DNA of 63,686 nucleotides, the filler included, from Octopus bimaculoides (lineage: Eukaryota): assembly GCF_001194135.2 (NCBI RefSeq). It is 6 parts of 4 records of this genome, joined end to end, with 100 filler letters (N's around TTAATTAATTAA, not from the genome) between each part and the next. Parts side by side here need not be neighbours in the genome. Positions count along the whole stretch, not along the records: positions 1 to 17,613 come from NC_068982.1; 5 more parts are not named here. The stretch is one strand, 5' to 3'. The position numbers and the translations under genes are program-made. Below the pieces are notes generated by a model. It was not told the origin of the DNA, made no database searches, and worked only from the letters and a program-made list of their open reading frames with translations. This document shows, piece after piece, positions 746-12,758 of this stretch. Position 1 is the first letter of the stretch. Each line of letters opens with the position of its first letter.

Positions 746-1115
746 GGCTGTGTGGTAAGTAGCTTGCTTACCAACCACATGGTTCCGGGTTCAGTCCCAC
801 TGCGTGGCACCTTGGCAAAGCCTTGTGAGTGAATTTGGTAGACGGAAACTGAAAGAAGCCCGTCGTATATATGTATATATATGTATGTGTGTGTATATGT
901 TTGTGTGTCTGCGCTTGTCCCTCCAACATCGCATGACAACCGATGCGGGTGTGTTTACGTCCCCGTAACTTAACGGTTCAATAAAAGAGACCGATAGAAT
1001 AAGTACTAGGCTTACAAAGAATAAGTCCTGGAGTAGATTTGCTCGACTAAATGCGGTGCTCCAGCATAGCTGCAGTCAAATGACTGAAACAACTAAAAGA
1101 ATAAAAGAATAAATG
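746..1115 (+). mobile_element. tRNA-derived SINE, family A, near full length
   Basis: Head GGCTGTGTGGTAAGTAGC..GGTTCCGGGTTCAGTCCCAC (A/B-box-like), central (TA/TG)n tract, tail ending AATAAAAGAATAAA; the same sequence recurs many times in the window. Confidence 0.9.
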
Positions 1116-1772
1116 AATTTGAGATTATCTCCCGTCCCATGAAGAGCTGATTTTAATTGCCACTTGGTAATTATCACAAATTTTCTAGAGACGGGGACAA
1201 TTTTAATAAATCAAGATTTTGTGTTGTACACCGNNNNNNNNNNNNNNNNNNNNNNNNNNNNNNNNNNNNNNNNNNNNNNNNNNNNNNNNNNNNNNNNNNN
1301 NNNNNNNNNNNNNNNNNNNNNNNNNNNNNNNNNNNNNNNNNNNNNNNNNNNNNNNNNNNNNNNNNNNNNNNNNNNNNNNNNNNNNNNNNNNNNNNNNNNN
1401 NNNNNNNNNNNNNNNNNNNNNNNNNNNNNNNNNNNNNNNNNNNNNNNNNNNNNNNNNNNNNNNNNNNNNNNNNNNNNNNNNNNNNNNNNNNNNNNNNNNN
1501 NNNNNNNNNNNNNNNNNNNNNNNNNNNNNNNNNNNNNNNNNNNNNNNNNNNNNNNNNNNNNNNNNNNNNNNNNNNNNNNNNNNNNNNNNNNNNNNNNNNN
1601 NNNNNNNNNNNNNNNNNNNNNNNNNNNNNNNNNNNCTGTTCTAACGGCGTTTCTGCATTCGAAAAAAACAAAACAAAAACAAAAAAACAAAAACAAAACA
1701 AATTATCATCTTATTTGTATCGTACAATAAACATTTCGACACATAAAAAAACACAAACGTTAGCTTGTTTAT

Positions 1773-2285: not shown

Positions 2286-2468
2286 ATCACCTAACATATT
2301 TAGGTTTTTGTTTGGTTTATTTTATTTTTCTATTCTATTTAGAGAATTTGAGTTAAATTGTTATTTGGCTGTGTATATATGTAATAATACAAATGATATG
2401 TGAGCATATGCATATATACATACATATATGTACATACCTACATCTACATGTATATATATATATGCATA

Positions 2469-2825
2469 TCCGGGTACAGGACGTCAAAAAAACGTGGACA
2501 AAAAAGGAACGGGAACATAAAGCACAAAAAACGAACTTTGTTTTACGGACAACAGAATAAACACATAGTAAAACAGACAAGCCACATATGGAACTTTTCC
2601 TTCATCAGCTGCCTCTATTCTAAACTAGGCGTTTCGAAGATGAGGCAGAACGCGCTCTTAGAATAGCTCTTCCCGCAAAGCAAAACCTGCTGTGCGGAGG
2701 ATTCCAAAATGGCAAACAGAAACGAAGGCAGGGAAAACTAAACAGGTAAACAAACGTTGAGGGCCGTTAAGCCGAACGAGATGAGATACTGAACGCTGTG
2801 ATGTGACGAACTTGAGCAGAGATGT
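2469..2825 (-). mobile_element. Dispersed repeat carrying the permuted hammerhead motif (possibly Penelope-like terminal repeat)
   Basis: Homologous to 9240-9581 in opposite orientation (shared AAGTTCGTTTT, CTTTATGTTC, CACGTTTTTT(G)ACGTCCTGTACCC); Penelope link is inference. Confidence 0.65.
2599..2653 (-). ncRNA. Non-circularly permuted hammerhead ribozyme motif, copy 1 (best preserved)
   Basis: Minus strand GCG-TT-CTGCCTC-AT-CTTC-GAAA-CGC-13nt-GAGGCAG-CTGATGA-AGG; stem I 7 bp perfect, stem III CGC/GCG, both core motifs intact. Confidence 0.7.
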
Positions 2826-3507: not shown

Positions 3508-3996
3508 AGATTATAGAAATATGTTGTTGGAAATAACTGAATAACGAGAATACGTTGTTTTTAGTCATTGGATTATCAAAGTATGTCTCTTGGAAGTCTA
3601 AATTTATAGCAATATGTTGCTGGTTGTCAATTTATTACAAGAATATATTCCTTATAGTCGCTGGATTATAATATGTTTGCAAATTCTGGATTGCAGGAAT
3701 ATAGTTGCTTGAGATCACTGAATTATAGGAGTATGTTGTTTGTAATCTCCGGATTGCAGGAAAATATTACTTATAGTCACTGGATTATAGTGATAAGGTG
3801 TTTGTAGTCTGTTTATCAGGAATATGTGGTTTATAATCCATAGCTTATGAAAATATGTTAGTTGTAATCCAACAATTTTAGGAATATGTTGTTTACAGTT
3901 TCTGATGTATAGGAATATGTTGTTTGTTGTTGCTAGGTTACTGAAATATAATTTTTGTAGTGTCTAGGTTATAGGAGTATGTTAGTTACAGTAGCT
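3508..3996. repeat. Degenerate 31-bp minisatellite, 16 units
   Basis: Consensus approx. GGATTATAGGAATATGTTGTTTGTAGTCACT; 13 of 16 units are exactly 31 bp (others 25, 32, 29). Confidence 0.9.
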
Positions 3997-6920: not shown

Positions 6921-7079
6921 NNNNNNNNNNNNNNNNNNNNNNNNNNNNNNNNNNNNNNNNNNNNNNNNNNNNNNNNNNNNNNNNNNNNNNNNNNNNNNNN
7001 NNNNNNNNNNNNNNNNNNNNNNNNNNNNNNNNNNNNNNNNNNNNNNNCACGCACACACATACGCACGCACACACATACG

Positions 7080-8392: not shown

Positions 8393-8994
8393 GAGTGTGT
8401 GTGTGTATATGTATGTATAGTGACACTAACCTATTAATGAAATTCAACATTATCTTATTAAGTACATTAATACTAAATCAGTGATTGAATATTTTAATAC
8501 TAACCTATTAAATATATTAGCGCTAACATTACTCTGAAATATATTACCTCTTATTTCCTACTTACGTTAACATTAATTTACCTATTAAGTATGTGAACAA
8601 TAATTTTAGTNNNNNNNNNNNNNNNNNNNNNNNNNNNNNNNNNNNNNNNNNNNNNNNNNNNNNNNNNNNNNNNNNNNNNNNNNNNNNNNNNNNNNNNNNN
8701 NNNNNNNNNNNNNNNNNNNNNNNNNNNNNNNNNNNNNNNNNNNNNNNNNNNNNNNNNNNNNNNNNNNNNNNNNNNNNNNNNNNNNNNNNNNNNNNNNNNN
8801 NNNNNNNNNNNNNNNNNNNNNNNNNNNNNNNNNNNNNNNNNNNNNNNNNNNNNNNNNNNNNNNNNNNNNNNNNNATATATACACACATATATATATGTAG
8901 GTATGTACATATATGTATATATGCATATATATATATTATTTATATTATTATATATCTTATATTATTATATATTATATATTATTTATATTATTAT

Positions 8995-9581
8995 ATGATC
9001 GAACGCTACGCATTTATTTCCAAGTAAGTTTTATCTTAATAATCCAGATGCGCACTCTACAGTTTCTATTCTCCCTTCACTTCTTCTTTCTCTTCCTTTC
9101 TCTCCCTCACTCTCCTCCTTGACTCTCTCGTTGCTCACACGTGACCAGCGGCTATCGTTCTTTTTTCCTCTTGCTTTACTAGAGATAAGATCTACTTTTT
9201 CCCGTCTCTTGTCACAGCTCCTTTCTCCAGCGTTCACCACTTAACCTCGTTGTGGCTTAACAGCCCTCACCGTTTGTTTTACTGTTTTGTTCTTACTGGC
9301 CTGTTTTTGTTACCACTCTAACCCTCCGCAAAAATCCCAAATTTTATTTAATTTGCTTTGCGTGAAGGTTTGTTTTAACGAAGTCGCGTCTTGTCCTAAC
9401 CTTCAAAGCGCAGAGTAGATAAAACAGGGGACAACTGATGAAAGGATTGTTCTTTATGTTGCGTGTCTCGTTTCTCAATTTGTTTCTTTCGTTGTCTGAA
9501 AAAAAGTTCGTTTTCCATGTTTTTGTTGTTTCTTTATGTTCTCAGTTTTCATTTTGATCACGTTTTTTACGTCCTGTACCC
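8995..9581 (+). mobile_element. Dispersed repeat with CT-rich 5' part, permuted hammerhead and T-rich 3' part
   Basis: Homology to 2469-2825; ends ACGTCCTGTACCC before (TA)n. Confidence 0.65.
9386..9445 (+). ncRNA. Permuted hammerhead motif, copy 2 (GAAA decayed)
   Basis: GCG-TC-TTGTCCT-AA-CCTTC-aaag-CGC-16nt-GGGACAA-CTGATGA-AAGG; GUC triplet, stem I 6 WC + 1 GU. Confidence 0.6.
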
Positions 9582-11770
9582 ATATATTCATGTATATATA
9601 CATATATATATGTAGGTATGTACATATATATATATATATGCATATATATANNNNNNNNNNNNNNNNNNNNNNNNNNNNNNNNNNNNNNNNNNNNNNNNNN
9701 NNNNNNNNNNNNNNNNNNNNNNNNNNNNNNNNNNNNNNNNNNNNNNNNNNNNNNNNNNNNNNNNNNNNNNNNNNNNNNNNNNNNNNNNNNNNNNNNNNNN
9801 NNNNNNNNNNNNNNNNNNNNNNNNNNNNNNNNNNNNNNNNNNNNNNNNNNNNNNNNNNNNNNNNNNNNNNNNNNNNNNNNNNNNNNNNNNNNNNNNNNNN
9901 NNNNNNNNNNNNNNNNNNNNNNNNNNNNNNNNNNNNNNNNNNNNNNNNNNNNNNNNNNNNNNNNNNNNNNNNNNNNNNNNNNNNNNNNNNNNNNNNNNNN
10001 NNNNNNNNNNNNNNNNNNNNNNNNNNNNNNNNNNNNNNNNNNNNNNNNNNNNNNNNNNNNNNNNNNNNNNNNNNNNNNNNNNNNNNNNNNNNNNNNNNNN
10101 NNNNNNNNNNNNNNNNNNNNNNNNNNNNNNNNNNNNNNNNNNNNNNNNNNNNNNNNNNNNNNNNNNNNNNNNNNNNNNNNNNNNNNNNNNNNNNNNNNNN
10201 NNNNNNNNNNNNNNNNNNNNNNNNNNNNNNNNNNNNNNNNNNNNNNNNNNNNNNNNNNNNNNNNNNNNNNNNNNNNNNNNNNNNNNNNNNNNNNNNNNNN
10301 NNNNNNNNNNNNNNNNNNNNNNNNNNNNNNNNNNNNNNNNNNNNNNNNNNNNNNNNNNNNNNNNNNNNNNNNNNNNNNNNNNNNNNNNNNNNNNNNNNNN
10401 NNNNNNNNNNNNNNNNNNNNNNNNNNNNNNNNNNNNNNNNNNNNNNNNNNNNNNNNNNNNNNNNNNNNNNNNNNNNNNNNNNNNNNNNNNNNNNNNNNNN
10501 NNNNNNNNNNNNNNNNNNNNNNNNNNATATATAACACCCACTTAATTCTTATGTTTTTGTGGTGCAGCAATTTTTATACTCTTATAAAAACAGTTCTCAC
10601 ATATCTGTTACCAAGTGACTTTTGACAAATTTGGAAGTTACAACATTGCATTAATCTTTTCTGAAAATCTGACCTTGTGATTTTTATAAATTTAATCTTT
10701 TATTGGTTACAGCTAGTTGGCTGTGTCCTTGCTGGCATTTACGAAGTTTCTGTCTGTTCTTCTCACTGGAGAGTGTCGGCAAATTTTTAGTAAAACAGTA
10801 TTCTGCAACCTTATTTCAACATTTTAATTAAAGCCATCGAAAAATGAATGAATATCACCACAATTTAATAGATATTCTCTGTTGAAAGCATTTGTAGAAT
10901 CATGTCTGTTTGAGAAATTTATATAGCTTTGTGAAGCTGGTCGTAGTTATTGGACTATAAACGCGTGCTTTAATAGATTGAATTCAAGCAATTAATAGGT
11001 ATTGAAATGTTAACGAGCTATATCGAACTAATTAGAAAAGTAGTCATTGGTCTTTATATGCATGTATGTACCTAATAAGAATCTAGGCTAAGCTCTATAG
11101 TATACATGAATAGGAGAATAATAAAGGTAACCGTTGAATAATCACTACTTTCACATAGTGAGATTTATTCTATAGCCAGCAGCCTCTGTAATTTGGTGTA
11201 TTTTCTCGGTATTACAACCATGAAAGACTAATACATTGGCACTATTCCCGAAAGAGTTGCTGCTGAAAAAGAAATGCGTATTCTGAAGTTTTCATGCTTC
11301 TGTACATTCGGAATACCTTGACAGTTTGAGGAATTTCGAAATAATTGTTTGTCCATTTTATCAATTCATGTTTTTAAATCTACTACTTTCTATCATTCGA
11401 CTTGAGACTTTTAATATCTTTATGGAAATAAACTGTTTGCTGTTCAATCCTCGCTTTGTAGAGGTGAAATAGAGTGCAAGTCTCATCAACCAAATCCAGC
11501 TGAGTATCATACGGTAGCTACTTTATCAACGCCCGAGGCTGAAATGATGCAGAAACCTCAATGTGGTTTAAAATAAACTGAAAACAGTCTACTGGACTAT
11601 CTGAAAGCATCTAGTGGACTGTCACGATCAAGAATTCGATTATATGCTTACTCGATGAGGGATGACCGGGAACTACACAATGACAATAACACTCGAAACC
11701 ACTAAAGGACGTGAATTCAGAGCATCGAGGCAACATAATAACATGAACTTACATATATCCCTATACTTAT

Positions 11771-11985
11771 TGGTTTCAAATTTTGGTACAAGGCCAGCAA
11801 TTTCGTGGGACGGGGTAAGTCAACTACATCGACCTCAGTACTCAACTAGTACTTATTTTATCGACCCTGAAAAGATGAAAGGAAAAGTCGACGTTGGCGG
11901 CATTTGAACTCAGAACGTAAAGTATTCTTTACTCTTATTGTCGCTAAGCATTTCGCCCGGAATGGTAACGATTCTGCCTGCTCGT
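11771..11985 (-). mobile_element. tRNA-derived SINE family B (Nin/Deu-like body), tail type 3
   Basis: TTTATCGACCCTGAAAAGATGAAAGGAAAAGTCGAC..TTGAACTCAGAACG body; tail TTTCAAATTTTGGTACAAGGCCAGC. Confidence 0.85.
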
Positions 11986-12091
11986 TACTTTATATATCAC
12001 TGTACATATCAGATATAAAGCATATATGTTGCATCGTATTAACATATGTTAACAAGTAGCTTACATTTAGTAAAACATATCTTACAATATT

Positions 12092-12560: not shown

Positions 12561-12758
12561 TCTTTTCTACTCTAGGCACAAGGCCCGAAATTTTTGGGGA
12601 AGGGACCAGTCGATTAGATCGACCCCAGTACGCAACTAATACTTAATTTATTGATCCCGAAAGGATGAAAGTCAAAGTCAACCTCAGCGGAATTTGAACT
12701 CAGAACGTAAAGAGAGACGAAGTACCGCTAAACATTTCGCCCGGTGTGCTAACGTTTC
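12561..12758 (-). mobile_element. SINE family B, tail type 1
   Basis: Family B body; tail TCTACTCTAGGCACAAGGCCCGAAATTTT. Confidence 0.9.

What the first reader, a model, noticed from the sequence alone, without database searches (positions are those of the whole stretch)
2599..2653. Family of hammerhead ribozymes with a scrambled (non-circular) strand order, five copies in 64 kb
Seen: the minus strand reads GCG-TT|CTGCCTC-AT-CTTC-GAAA-CGC-13nt-GAGGCAG-CTGATGA-AGG. Established: a hammerhead has three strands, A (stem III'-UH-stem I), B (stem I'-CUGANGA-stem II) and C (stem II'-GAAA-stem III). Types I, II and III are circular permutations of the order A-B-C. Here the order is A-C-B, which no circular permutation gives. 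The same layout occurs at 9386, 14677, 32049(-) and 49979 with different but still complementary stems. Stem III is CGC/GCG, CGC/GCG, CTGC/GCAG, CGGT/ACTG and TGA/TCA. Stem I is CTGCCTC/GAGGCAG, TTGTCC/GGACAA, TCAA/TTGA and TTGT/ACAA. A UH dinucleotide sits at the expected junction in all five. Inference: either a pseudoknotted monomer (short linker between the neighbouring ends of stems I and II, 12-18-nt linker from stem III to stem I) or a domain-swapped dimer in which strand C comes from a second copy. Stem II is weak in all copies. Natural non-circular hammerhead permutations have been reported as rare; I cannot check whether this family is among them.
Basis: partly seen in the sequence, partly recalled or inferred. 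Interest (0 to 1): 0.9.

Follow-up and report, generated by a model that had tools for sequence, protein, structure and literature searches.

The report
Permuted hammerhead-like motif in octopus repeat
An old octopus mobile-element family carries a 70-base motif laid out like the rare rearranged 'type-SGC' hammerhead ribozyme; if it cuts, it would be the first one seen in an animal genome, but only one of four copies is intact and cleavage is untested.

Summary
The string is on the minus strand at 2653-2599, as described. The A-C-B order is not a new permutation. It is the 'type-SGC' hammerhead of Eckert et al. 2023 (PMC10085705), validated in vitro and so far known only from environmental RNA.

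Copies 1 (2400-2822, minus) and 2 (8997-9645, plus) are not independent. They are 70% identical copies of a 5'-truncated, retroposon-like repeat that sits in TA microsatellites of an octopus genome. A fourth copy lies in Octopus bimaculoides (L003 22826-23040).

Only copy 1 has the full core plus stems I (7 bp), II (3 bp) and III (3 bp + A-U). Copy 2 keeps all helices, with compensatory changes in stem I, but has AAAG for GAAA. Copy 3 (14677-14736) keeps core and stems II/III but has no stem I, and its homology is unproven.

Chance is unlikely: a copy-1-grade match arose in 1-10 of 3000 random sequences, and none arose in 135 kb of other real DNA. Four copies cannot give a covariation test.

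Probability of a real, at least ancestral, self-cleaving motif: about 0.5. If real, it is a new member of a known kind in a new setting.

The parts
2400..2822 (-). Copy 1 of the interspersed repeat (5'-truncated, ~420 nt). It is bounded by microsatellites at 2412-2469 and 2822-2900.
   Evidence: 70.6% identity over 428 nt to 9228-9645; alignment; microsatellites.
2585..2653 (-). Copy 1 hammerhead-like motif in type-SGC order; the only complete one.
   Evidence: Descriptor hit with I=7, II=3 (one extra base), III=3, S->G link 3 nt, G->C link 13 nt. Sequence read.
2649..2653 (-). Block S, first half: stem III 5' strand GCG (2653-2651), U16.1 (2650), U17 (2649). Predicted cleavage lies between 2649 and 2648.
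   Evidence: Read directly, with hammerhead numbering by analogy to SGC-1 and SGC-3.
2642..2648 (-). Stem I 5' strand CUGCCUC. It pairs with 2615-2609.
   Evidence: 7 Watson-Crick pairs.
2629..2638 (-). Block G: stem II 5' strand UUC (2638-2636), GAAA (2635-2632), stem III 3' strand CGC (2631-2629).
   Evidence: The CpG at 2636-2635 is CA in copies 2 and 4.
2598..2615 (-). Block C: stem I 3' strand GAGGCAG (2615-2609), CUGAUGA (2608-2602), unpaired A (2601), stem II 3' strand GGA (2600-2598).
   Evidence: An unpaired base after A9 is present in every published type-SGC row read.
2591..2620 (-). Candidate fourth helix: GAAU (2620-2617) with GUUC (2594-2591), enclosing block C. The alternative partner for GUUC/UUCC is the local hairpin GGAA-AAG-UUCC.
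   Evidence: Read directly. Four pairs with free gaps are expected by chance in roughly 1 of 5 cases, so this is not significant.
8997..9645 (+). Copy 2 of the repeat, the longest (~650 nt). It lies between TA-rich arrays at 8875-8996 and 9581-9650.
9386..9451 (+). Copy 2 motif: GCG-UC|UUGUCCU-AACC-UUC-AAAG-CGC-16 nt-GGGACAA-CUGAUGA-AA-GGA-UUGUU. All helices can form, but the core is mutated (G12->A, A15.1->G).
   Evidence: Relative to copy 1, stem I shows C-G->U-A and an inserted U-A pair.
14677..14736 (+). Copy 3 motif: GCAG-UU|CUAUCUC-AAG-GUAUC-GAAA-CUGC-16 nt-AG-CUGAUGA-G-GGUAU. The core is intact, stem III is 4 bp, stem II 5 bp, stem I only 2 bp.
   Evidence: No detectable similarity to copies 1 and 2 outside the motif; flanks are unique.

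Best explanation
The motif is a retroposon-borne hammerhead of the known type-SGC architecture, seen here mostly as decayed relics.

Shown:
- An octopus interspersed repeat of about 0.2-0.65 kb has variable 5' truncation and a common 3' end, and lies in TA-rich microsatellites.
- About 130-215 nt from its 3' end it carries a ~70-nt segment with the block order S (stem III'-UH-stem I), G (stem II'-GAAA-stem III), C (stem I'-CUGAUGA-stem II).

Inferred: RNA read from the minus strand at copy 1 would fold as a double pseudoknot.
- Stem III: GCG+U with A+CGC.
- Stem I: CUGCCUC/GAGGCAG.
- Stem II: UUC/GGA, after one unpaired A.
- Possibly a fourth helix, GAAU/GUUC, clamping block C.

The core would then cleave between U2649 and C2648 by the usual hammerhead chemistry, in which the 2'-O of residue 17 attacks its own phosphate and leaves a 2',3'-cyclic phosphate and a 5'-OH.

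Inferred consequence: because block S comes first, nearly the whole ribozyme stays on the downstream product. The motif could therefore trim upstream read-through RNA from the element's transcript.

Copies 2, 3 and 4 would be dead: core mutations in 2 and 4, loss of stem I in 3 and 4. Copy 1 might still cut.
For: - The layout matches type SGC point by point. This includes a 3-nt S->G linker, a G->C linker within 0-44 nt, G10.1-C11.1, a GUU/GUC cleavage triplet, and one unpaired base after A9, as in all published rows read.
- My descriptor recovers the four published examples. It finds only copies 1 and 3 in the piece.
- Chance is low: copy-1 grade arose in 1/3000 random sequences, total >=13 in 10/3000, copy-3 grade in 8/3000. 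There was nothing above total 8 in 135 kb of other real DNA or in reversed controls.
- Copy 2 was found by homology, not by motif, and keeps all three helices at 30% divergence. Neutral substitution does so in 0.8% of trials. Its stem I changed by C-G->U-A and by an inserted U-A pair.
- The 24 hammerhead-critical columns are 20-22/24 identical between copies 1 and 2, against 60% overall (block-permutation p = 0.065 to 0.009).
- The G12->A changes in copies 2 and 4 sit in a CpG (TCGA->TCAA). Such sites decay fast [general knowledge].
- Similarity of copies 3 and 4 begins within a few bases of the 5' edge of block S.
- Hammerheads are typical cargo of metazoan retroelements.
Against: - Only 1 of 4 copies has both an intact core and all stems.
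- Stems II and III are 3 bp in copy 1, against 5 bp in the published examples. Descriptor totals are 13 against 16-18.
- The fourth helix was required for cleavage of SGC-3. Here it is short, shifts register between copies, and is not above chance.
- With the tree ((c1,c4),c2), plain parsimony allows A, not G, at position 12 in the ancestor.
- In copies 1 and 4 the minimum-energy fold is one long hairpin that pairs GAAAC with GUUU. No copy has a notable z-score (-1.6, +0.4, -1.5, -2.2).
- No Rfam hammerhead model matches, even at E<=10. This is expected for a pseudoknotted order.
- Copy 3 is not demonstrably homologous and lacks stem I.
- Eckert et al. searched RefSeq and reported type SGC from RNA samples only.
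- The window was chosen because of this pattern, so the p-values overstate surprise.
- Several other blocks of the repeat are as conserved as block C.
Confidence: 0.48

Rival explanations
1. Chance look-alike on a real hairpin. The repeat family carries a conserved stem-loop (the 'stem I' hairpin) kept for another reason, or by DNA-level template switching between inverted arms. CTGATGA, GAAA and two 3-bp complementarities happen to lie around it. Nothing cleaves.
For: - Short stems: II and III are 3 bp.
- Copies 1 and 4 fold best as one long hairpin. In copy 4 that hairpin is improved by the same G->A change that destroys G12.
- Two of three clear family members have A at position 12.
- A large genome's TE consensus library (a few Mb) would be expected to hold about one copy-1-grade match by chance, and a high-copy family would then show it repeatedly [my extrapolation].
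- Conservation of hammerhead-critical columns is only borderline (p = 0.065 in the unedited alignment).
Against: - Two outliers (totals 13 and 11) lie in one 16-kb piece, against none above 8 in 135 kb of other real DNA and none above 7 in reversed controls.
- The joint chance under the Markov null is about 6e-5.
- Copy 2 retains stems II and III unchanged and stem I through compensatory changes (0.8% under neutral decay).
- The register with one unpaired base after A9 matches the published class.
Confidence: 0.37
2. A structured RNA element of the retroposon with the same helices but another role, such as a pseudoknot recognised by the partner reverse transcriptase or a stability element. The hammerhead-like boxes would be incidental, and there would be no self-cleavage.
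For: Helices are kept between copies 1 and 2 while two core bases differ. Similarity of copies 3 and 4 starts at the motif border, which fits a discrete module.
Against: CUGAUGA is invariant in all four copies, and G10.1-C11.1, U16.1 and A13/A14 are also invariant. This is unexplained if only the helices matter. No known RT-recognition element has this form [my knowledge]. The motif is 130-215 nt from the 3' end, not at it.
Confidence: 0.1
3. A domain-swapped dimer or trans-acting hammerhead. Block G or block C would be supplied by a second copy or a second molecule, as in the small Penelope-element hammerheads that act as dimers.
For: Weak stems II and III could be reinforced in a dimer. Dimeric hammerheads exist in metazoan retroelements (Lunse et al. 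2017, cited).
Against: The monomeric type-SGC fold is experimentally established for the same order. No palindromic loop or self-complementary segment that would drive dimerisation was seen in copies 1-4. Copies are dispersed, not tandem.
Confidence: 0.03

Closest known systems
Type-SGC hammerhead ribozymes (HRIMA-1 motif and type-SGC variants; Eckert, Friedrich, Weinberg & Weinberg, NAR 2023, PMC10085705)
   Same: - The block order S-G-C is identical.
- The same conserved core: CUGANGA, GAAA, U16.1-H17, G10.1-C11.1.
- One unpaired base between A9 and stem II.
- An S->G linker of 2-4 nt and a G->C linker within 0-44 nt.
- The cleavage site near the 5' end of the motif.
   Different: - Known examples come only from metatranscriptomes (soil, spruce, freshwater, sludge), on contigs that also carry hairpin ribozymes. 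This one is in animal chromosomal DNA, inside a retroposon-like repeat.
- Known stems II and III are about 5 bp, against 3 bp here.
- The known fourth helix is 4-7 bp, covaries and is required for cleavage. Here it is marginal.
- The unpaired base is U in all published rows read, but A, G or AA here.
- Stem I sequences are unrelated.
Canonical hammerheads of metazoan retroelements (type I in Penelope-like elements, retrozymes, Schistosoma Sm-alpha, newt satellite 2)
   Same: The same catalytic boxes, and carriage by high-copy non-autonomous or retro-elements of invertebrate genomes. Most genomic copies are decayed.
   Different: Those are the circular permutation C-G-S (type I), with a nested three-way junction that Rfam models detect. 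The order here is S-G-C with two pseudoknots, and no Rfam hammerhead model matches.
'HHR_core / HHR_half_core' of Naiad Penelope-like elements (Craig et al., MBE 2021, PMC8557442)
   Same: Elements that insert in (TA)n microsatellites and occur as old remnants in Octopus. They have CUGANGA and GAAA boxes that fit no canonical descriptor, with GAAA sometimes on the 'wrong' side.
   Different: No reverse transcriptase or GIY-YIG coding sequence adjoins copies 1-4, so a link to Naiads is only a lead.
HDV-like ribozymes at the 5' ends of non-LTR retrotransposons (R2, RTE, L1Tc) [my knowledge, not checked here]
   Same: A self-cleaving motif that cuts at its own 5' edge, so that it stays with the element RNA and removes upstream co-transcript.
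   Different: A different fold and chemistry context. HDV-like ribozymes need no upstream sequence, whereas a type-SGC hammerhead needs 5-6 upstream bases (stem III strand plus UH), which a copy made from cleaved RNA would lose.

Membership tests
Type-SGC hammerhead ribozyme | 5'-3' block order S (stem III'-UH-stem I), G (stem II'-GAAA-stem III), C (stem I'-CUGANGA-stem II) | tested here: met
   The order is present in copies 1, 2, 3 and (truncated) 4. Definition taken.
Type-SGC hammerhead ribozyme | Invariant core: C3 U4 G5 A6 N7 G8 A9; G12 A13 A14 A15.1; U16.1; H17 not G | tested here: inconclusive
   Complete in copies 1 and 3. Copy 2 has AAAG (G12A, A15.1G) and copy 4 has AAAA (G12A). CUGAUGA, U16.1 and H17 are kept in all four.
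Type-SGC hammerhead ribozyme | Stem I (5-6 bp in known examples) starting right after H17 and ending right before C3, with covariation | tested here: inconclusive
   Copy 1 has 7 bp. Copy 2 has 7 bp, with C-G->U-A and an inserted U-A pair. Copy 3 has 2 bp. In copy 4 the 5' strand is partly deleted.
Type-SGC hammerhead ribozyme | Stem II of about 5 bp with G10.1-C11.1, preceded by one unpaired base after A9 | tested here: inconclusive
   G10.1-C11.1 and the unpaired base are present in copies 1, 3 and 4 (copy 2 has two unpaired bases). Stem length is 3 bp in copies 1 and 2 and 5 bp in copy 3. Published rows have 5 bp.
Type-SGC hammerhead ribozyme | Stem III (A15.1-U16.1 plus 4-5 bp) joining the 5' end of S to the 3' end of G | tested here: met
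   The stem is short but present. Copies 1 and 2 have GCG/CGC plus A-U (G.U in copy 2), and copy 3 has GCAG/CUGC plus A-U. It is broken in copy 4.
Type-SGC hammerhead ribozyme | Fourth helix pairing the G->C linker with the sequence 3' of stem II (required for SGC-3 cleavage) | tested here: inconclusive
   Copy 1 has GAAU/GUUC (4 bp), copy 2 AACAG/UUGUU (5 bp, different register) and copy 3 only AAA/UUU. Such short helices are expected by chance at roughly 7-18%.
Type-SGC hammerhead ribozyme | Statistically significant covariation over many sequences | not testable with these tools
   Only four copies could be gathered. Searches for more failed.
Type-SGC hammerhead ribozyme | Site-specific Mg2+-dependent self-cleavage 3' of H17, abolished by a core mutation | not testable with these tools
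   A bench assay is needed.
Canonical hammerhead (types I, II, III; Rfam models) | Circular order C-G-S with a nested three-way junction, and a match to an Rfam hammerhead covariance model | tested here: not met
   No hammerhead family matched at E<=10 in the piece or at gathering score in L001/L003. The order is non-circular.
C/D-box snoRNA | C box RUGAUGA near the 5' end, D box CUGA near the 3' end, and a terminal stem outside both boxes | tested here: not met
   There is only a weak SNORD127 hit on copy 2 (26.8 bits against a gathering score of 45, E=1.5). Copy 1 has no D box, and there is no terminal stem in either copy.

The most novel reading that the evidence does not exclude
Octopus genomes harbour a DNA-encoded, retroposon-borne family of type-SGC (non-circularly permuted) hammerhead ribozymes. 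It would be the first outside environmental circular-RNA agents and the first in an animal. Because it cuts at its own 5' edge, the ribozyme would act as a 5'-end processing device for the element's transcript, the role HDV-like ribozymes play in R2, RTE and L1Tc elements.
Probability: 0.35. Interest if true: 0.8.

Novelty: new member of a known kind. Interest (0 to 1): 0.6.

Why it matters
Non-circular permutations of a ribozyme have so far been shown only for hammerheads from environmental RNA samples. Their hosts and biology are unknown.

A family written in an animal's chromosomes would bring three gains:
- The permuted fold would get a tractable host: genome, transcriptomes and tissues.
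- It would show that the fold arose or spread in retroelements as well as in viroid-like agents.
- It would mean that standard hammerhead searches (nested covariance models, C-G-S descriptors) miss a class of ribozymes in eukaryotic repeats.

It would also speak to the published remark that some Penelope-like elements have hammerhead boxes that fit no canonical descriptor.

If it is a chance look-alike, the case is a useful warning. A short-stem descriptor hit inside a multi-copy repeat imitates a 'family with covarying stems'.

Tried and rejected
1. Rfam, all families, E<=10 on the piece, and gathering score on L001/L003. No hammerhead hit. The mir-297/466 hits are TA/TG microsatellites.
2. 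tRNA scan for a SINE head: none.
3. More copies through a metagenome scan for GGCTTAACNGCCCTCANCGTTTG: 0 hits.
4. More copies through a concatenated six-frame peptide query of copies 1-3 against 5.8 billion proteins: 0 hits.
5. Look-up of window ORF 16123-16500 and of UniRef-only octopus proteins P0040 and P0041: not on record.
6. Sampling octopus DNA through a mariner remnant and SINE peptides gave L001 (20.5 kb, about half N) and L003 (76 kb), with one further copy. The ENA loci L002, L004 and L005 lack the octopus SINE, so they are not octopus.
7. A profile HMM of the family, and another of the motif alone, found no additional copies. The leave-one-out profile did not recover copy 3.
8. C/D snoRNA reading: rejected, since there is no D box or terminal stem.
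9. Reading the local hairpin 3' of CUGAUGA (GGAA-AAG-UUCC) as a canonical stem II of a type I hammerhead: rejected, because no GAAA follows it.
10. Penelope-like origin: only a lead. No RT or endonuclease remnant adjoins the copies, and the supplement with Naiad consensuses is not held.
11. Thermodynamic support: none (z-scores -2.2 to +0.4).
12. One literature search ('permuted hammerhead' or 'retrotransposon') returned nothing useful.

Full report
**1. What is in the sequence**

The piece (15,823 non-N bases) has only seven CTGANGA sites on both strands.

No Rfam family of any hammerhead type matches anywhere in the piece, even at E<=10. The only 'significant' hits are microRNA models landing on TA/TG microsatellites.

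**2. The order is already described**

A-C-B is their 'type SGC'.

- That class has 583 predicted members.
- Five expected-to-be-functional candidates cleaved at the predicted site in vitro, including SGC-1, SGC-2 and SGC-3.
- In SGC-3 all four helices were confirmed by disruptive and compensatory mutants.
- It is reported only from metatranscriptomic RNA (soil, spruce, sludge, freshwater), on contigs that also carry hairpin ribozymes.
- In the library I could search, no other paper uses the term.

Two details of the published sequences matter here. The linker from stem I to stem II' is about 2-4 nt. There is also always one unpaired base, U in every row I could read, between CUGAUGA and G10.1.

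**3. Re-reading the copies in that register**

I wrote a descriptor with these rules:
- strict core: CUGANGA, GAAA, U16.1, H17 not G;
- helices counted as contiguous Watson-Crick or G.U pairs from the junction outward;
- 0-2 unpaired bases allowed after A9.

It recovers SGC-1, SGC-3 and two HRIMA-1 rows. All four have one unpaired base, a stem II of 5 bp and totals of 16-18 pairs.

In the piece it finds two hits:
- Copy 1: stem I 7, stem II 3 (GGA/UUC after one unpaired A), stem III 3 plus A-U, S->G linker 3 nt, G->C linker 13 nt, total 13.
- Copy 3: stem I 2, stem II 5 (GGUAU/GUAUC after one unpaired G), stem III 4 plus A-U, total 11.

Copy 2 fails the strict core because its G block reads UUC-AAAG-CGC. 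With that relaxed, it has stem I 7 (UUGUCCU/GGGACAA), stem II 3, stem III 3 and a 5-bp helix AACAG/UUGUU in the position of the fourth helix.

**4. The copies are not independent**

Copies 1 and 2 align over about 420 nt at 70.6% identity, in opposite orientation.

- Copy 2 extends further 5', to about 650 nt (8997-9645), between two TA-rich arrays.
- Copy 1 (2400-2822) stops at an (ATGT)n array.

The piece shares other repeats at 75-87% identity with Octopus bimaculoides chromosome sequence, and it carries the abundant octopus tRNA-derived SINE. It is therefore octopus DNA.

In 76 kb of O. bimaculoides (L003) I found one more member, copy 4 (22826-23040). It is 81% identical to copy 1 and truncated within a few bases of the 5' edge of block S. 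It has five bases of stem I deleted and UUC-AAAA-CGC in block G.

Variable 5' truncation, a common 3' end (ACGTCCTGTACCC followed by a TA/TATG-rich tail) and residence in microsatellites point to a retroposon whose sense strand is the hammerhead strand.

Penelope-like elements of the Naiad clade insert in (TA)n and persist as old remnants in Octopus. They were noted to carry hammerhead boxes that fit no canonical descriptor. This is a lead that I could not test.

Copy 3 has unique flanks and no significant similarity to the family outside the motif. A profile built from copies 1, 2 and 4 does not retrieve it. By eye it shares UUCU..CUCA, UCGAAAC and CUGAUGA.GG....UUCCAUA with copy 1. Its missing stem I could be a 4-nt deletion (GCAG) just before CUGAUGA. 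That alignment is my own and unproven.

**5. Chance**

In 3000 first-order Markov sequences of the same length and composition:

| Grade | Sequences with a match |
|---|---|
| Copy-1 grade (I>=7, II>=3, III>=3) | 1 |
| Total of 13 or more pairs | 10 |
| Copy-3 grade | 8 |

In 151 kb of real sequence (the piece plus five fetched loci) the best totals per CUGANGA site were 6, 6, 6, 7 and 8, then 11 and 13. The same sequences reversed gave 7 and 7. Copies 1 and 3 are therefore clear outliers.

Three caveats apply:
- The window was selected for this pattern.
- A multi-copy repeat whose ancestor matched by chance would show the match repeatedly.

**6. Constraint**

Copy 2 can be treated as an unbiased sample, because it is defined by homology over 420 nt.

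- At 30% divergence from copy 1, neutral substitution keeps stems I (>=6 of 7), II and III together in 0.8% of simulations. Copy 2 keeps all of them.
- Stem I differs by a double change (C-G to U-A), by an inserted U-A pair, by one change to a G.U wobble, and by one lost terminal pair.
- The 24 hammerhead-critical columns are identical at 20/24 (MAFFT alignment) or 22/24 (with the 1-nt gap placed after CUGAUGA), against 60% for the whole alignment. Block permutation gives p = 0.065 or 0.009.
- The two core changes in copy 2, and the one in copy 4, include G12->A at a CpG (TCGA to TCAA).

This fits masters under selection followed by neutral decay of inserted copies. It is thin evidence, and other blocks of the repeat are equally conserved.

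**7. What argues against**

- Stems II and III are 3 bp, not 5.
- The fourth helix, which SGC-3 needs for cleavage, is marginal and shifts register between copies.
- Two of three clear family members lack G12.
- Copies 1 and 4 fold best as one long hairpin, in which GAAAC pairs with GUUU of the linker. Copy 4's G->A change plus an extra U improves that hairpin. Fold z-scores are unremarkable.
- Eckert et al. searched RefSeq with descriptors and reported no DNA-encoded type SGC.

**8. Verdict**

The interpretation as a non-circular hammerhead permutation is formally right. The permutation is the known type SGC, and the 'family' is an old octopus retroposon.

| Reading | Probability |
|---|---|
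| The master element carried a working type-SGC hammerhead; copy 1 may still cut between 2649 and 2648 (minus strand) | ~0.5 |
| Chance look-alike on a conserved hairpin | ~0.37 |
| Structured element with another role | ~0.1 |
| Dimer or trans-acting hammerhead | ~0.03 |

If real, it is a new member of a known kind in a new setting: animal DNA, on a retroelement. The S-first order suggests a role in trimming the element's 5' end. The decisive steps are a genome-wide alignment of the family with a covariation test, and a simple in vitro cleavage assay.

Noticed in passing
window 15663-16900 (+): Frameshifted remnant of a Tc1/mariner-type DDE transposase (ORFs 15691-15924, 15839-16126, 16123-16500). 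Its closest named relatives are an Octopus bimaculoides uncharacterised protein and 'Tcb2 transposase' of a copepod. It is interrupted at 16394-16628 by a SINE copy.
   Followed up: partly
window 11774-11997, 12564-12759, 12757-12991, 12817-12998, 16394-16628: Five copies (75-87% identical, two of them adjoining or nested) of the abundant octopus tRNA-derived SINE. The B-box-like GAGTTCAAATTCCGCC lies on the minus strand. There are 18 hits in the 76-kb O. bimaculoides locus L003 and none in the ENA loci.
   Followed up: partly
window 8866-8935 and 9581-9650; also 2414-2490 (inverted) and 14759-14778 (inverted); L003 22975-23030: The same TA-rich sequence, ...ACATATATATATGTAGGTATGTACATATAT...TATGCATATATATA, flanks copy 2 on both sides as a ~50-70-nt direct repeat at 76% identity. 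It also ends copies 1 and 4 and lies inverted next to copy 3. It could be a long target duplication, a preferred target satellite, or the element's tail.
   Followed up: partly
window 3511-3973: A minisatellite of about 31/62-nt units (TTATAGGAATATGTTGTT...), six or more diverged copies, next to GT-rich arrays.
   Followed up: no
window 955-1105 and 2071-2199; L001 11250-11400: Another repeat family. It forms an inverted pair in the window (75% identity) and has an 87% identical copy in O. bimaculoides L001.
   Followed up: no
L003 22826-23040 (+): Copy 4 of the hammerhead-like repeat lies inside the 56-kb span of gene LOC106868243, in the sense orientation. It would therefore be transcribed as part of an intron.
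   Followed up: no
window 2401-2469, 8872-8938, 9582-9653, 17514-17578: Rfam mir-297/mir-466/mir-3149 matches (about 41 bits against gathering scores of 85-100) are artefacts of TA/TG-rich microsatellites, not microRNA genes.
   Followed up: yes
window 1234-1635, 6921-7047, 8611-8874, 9651-10526, 14883-15003: Five assembly gaps (runs of N, 121-876 nt), all inside or next to microsatellites. The 3' tail of copy 2 and the right flank of copy 3 run into gaps.
   Followed up: no
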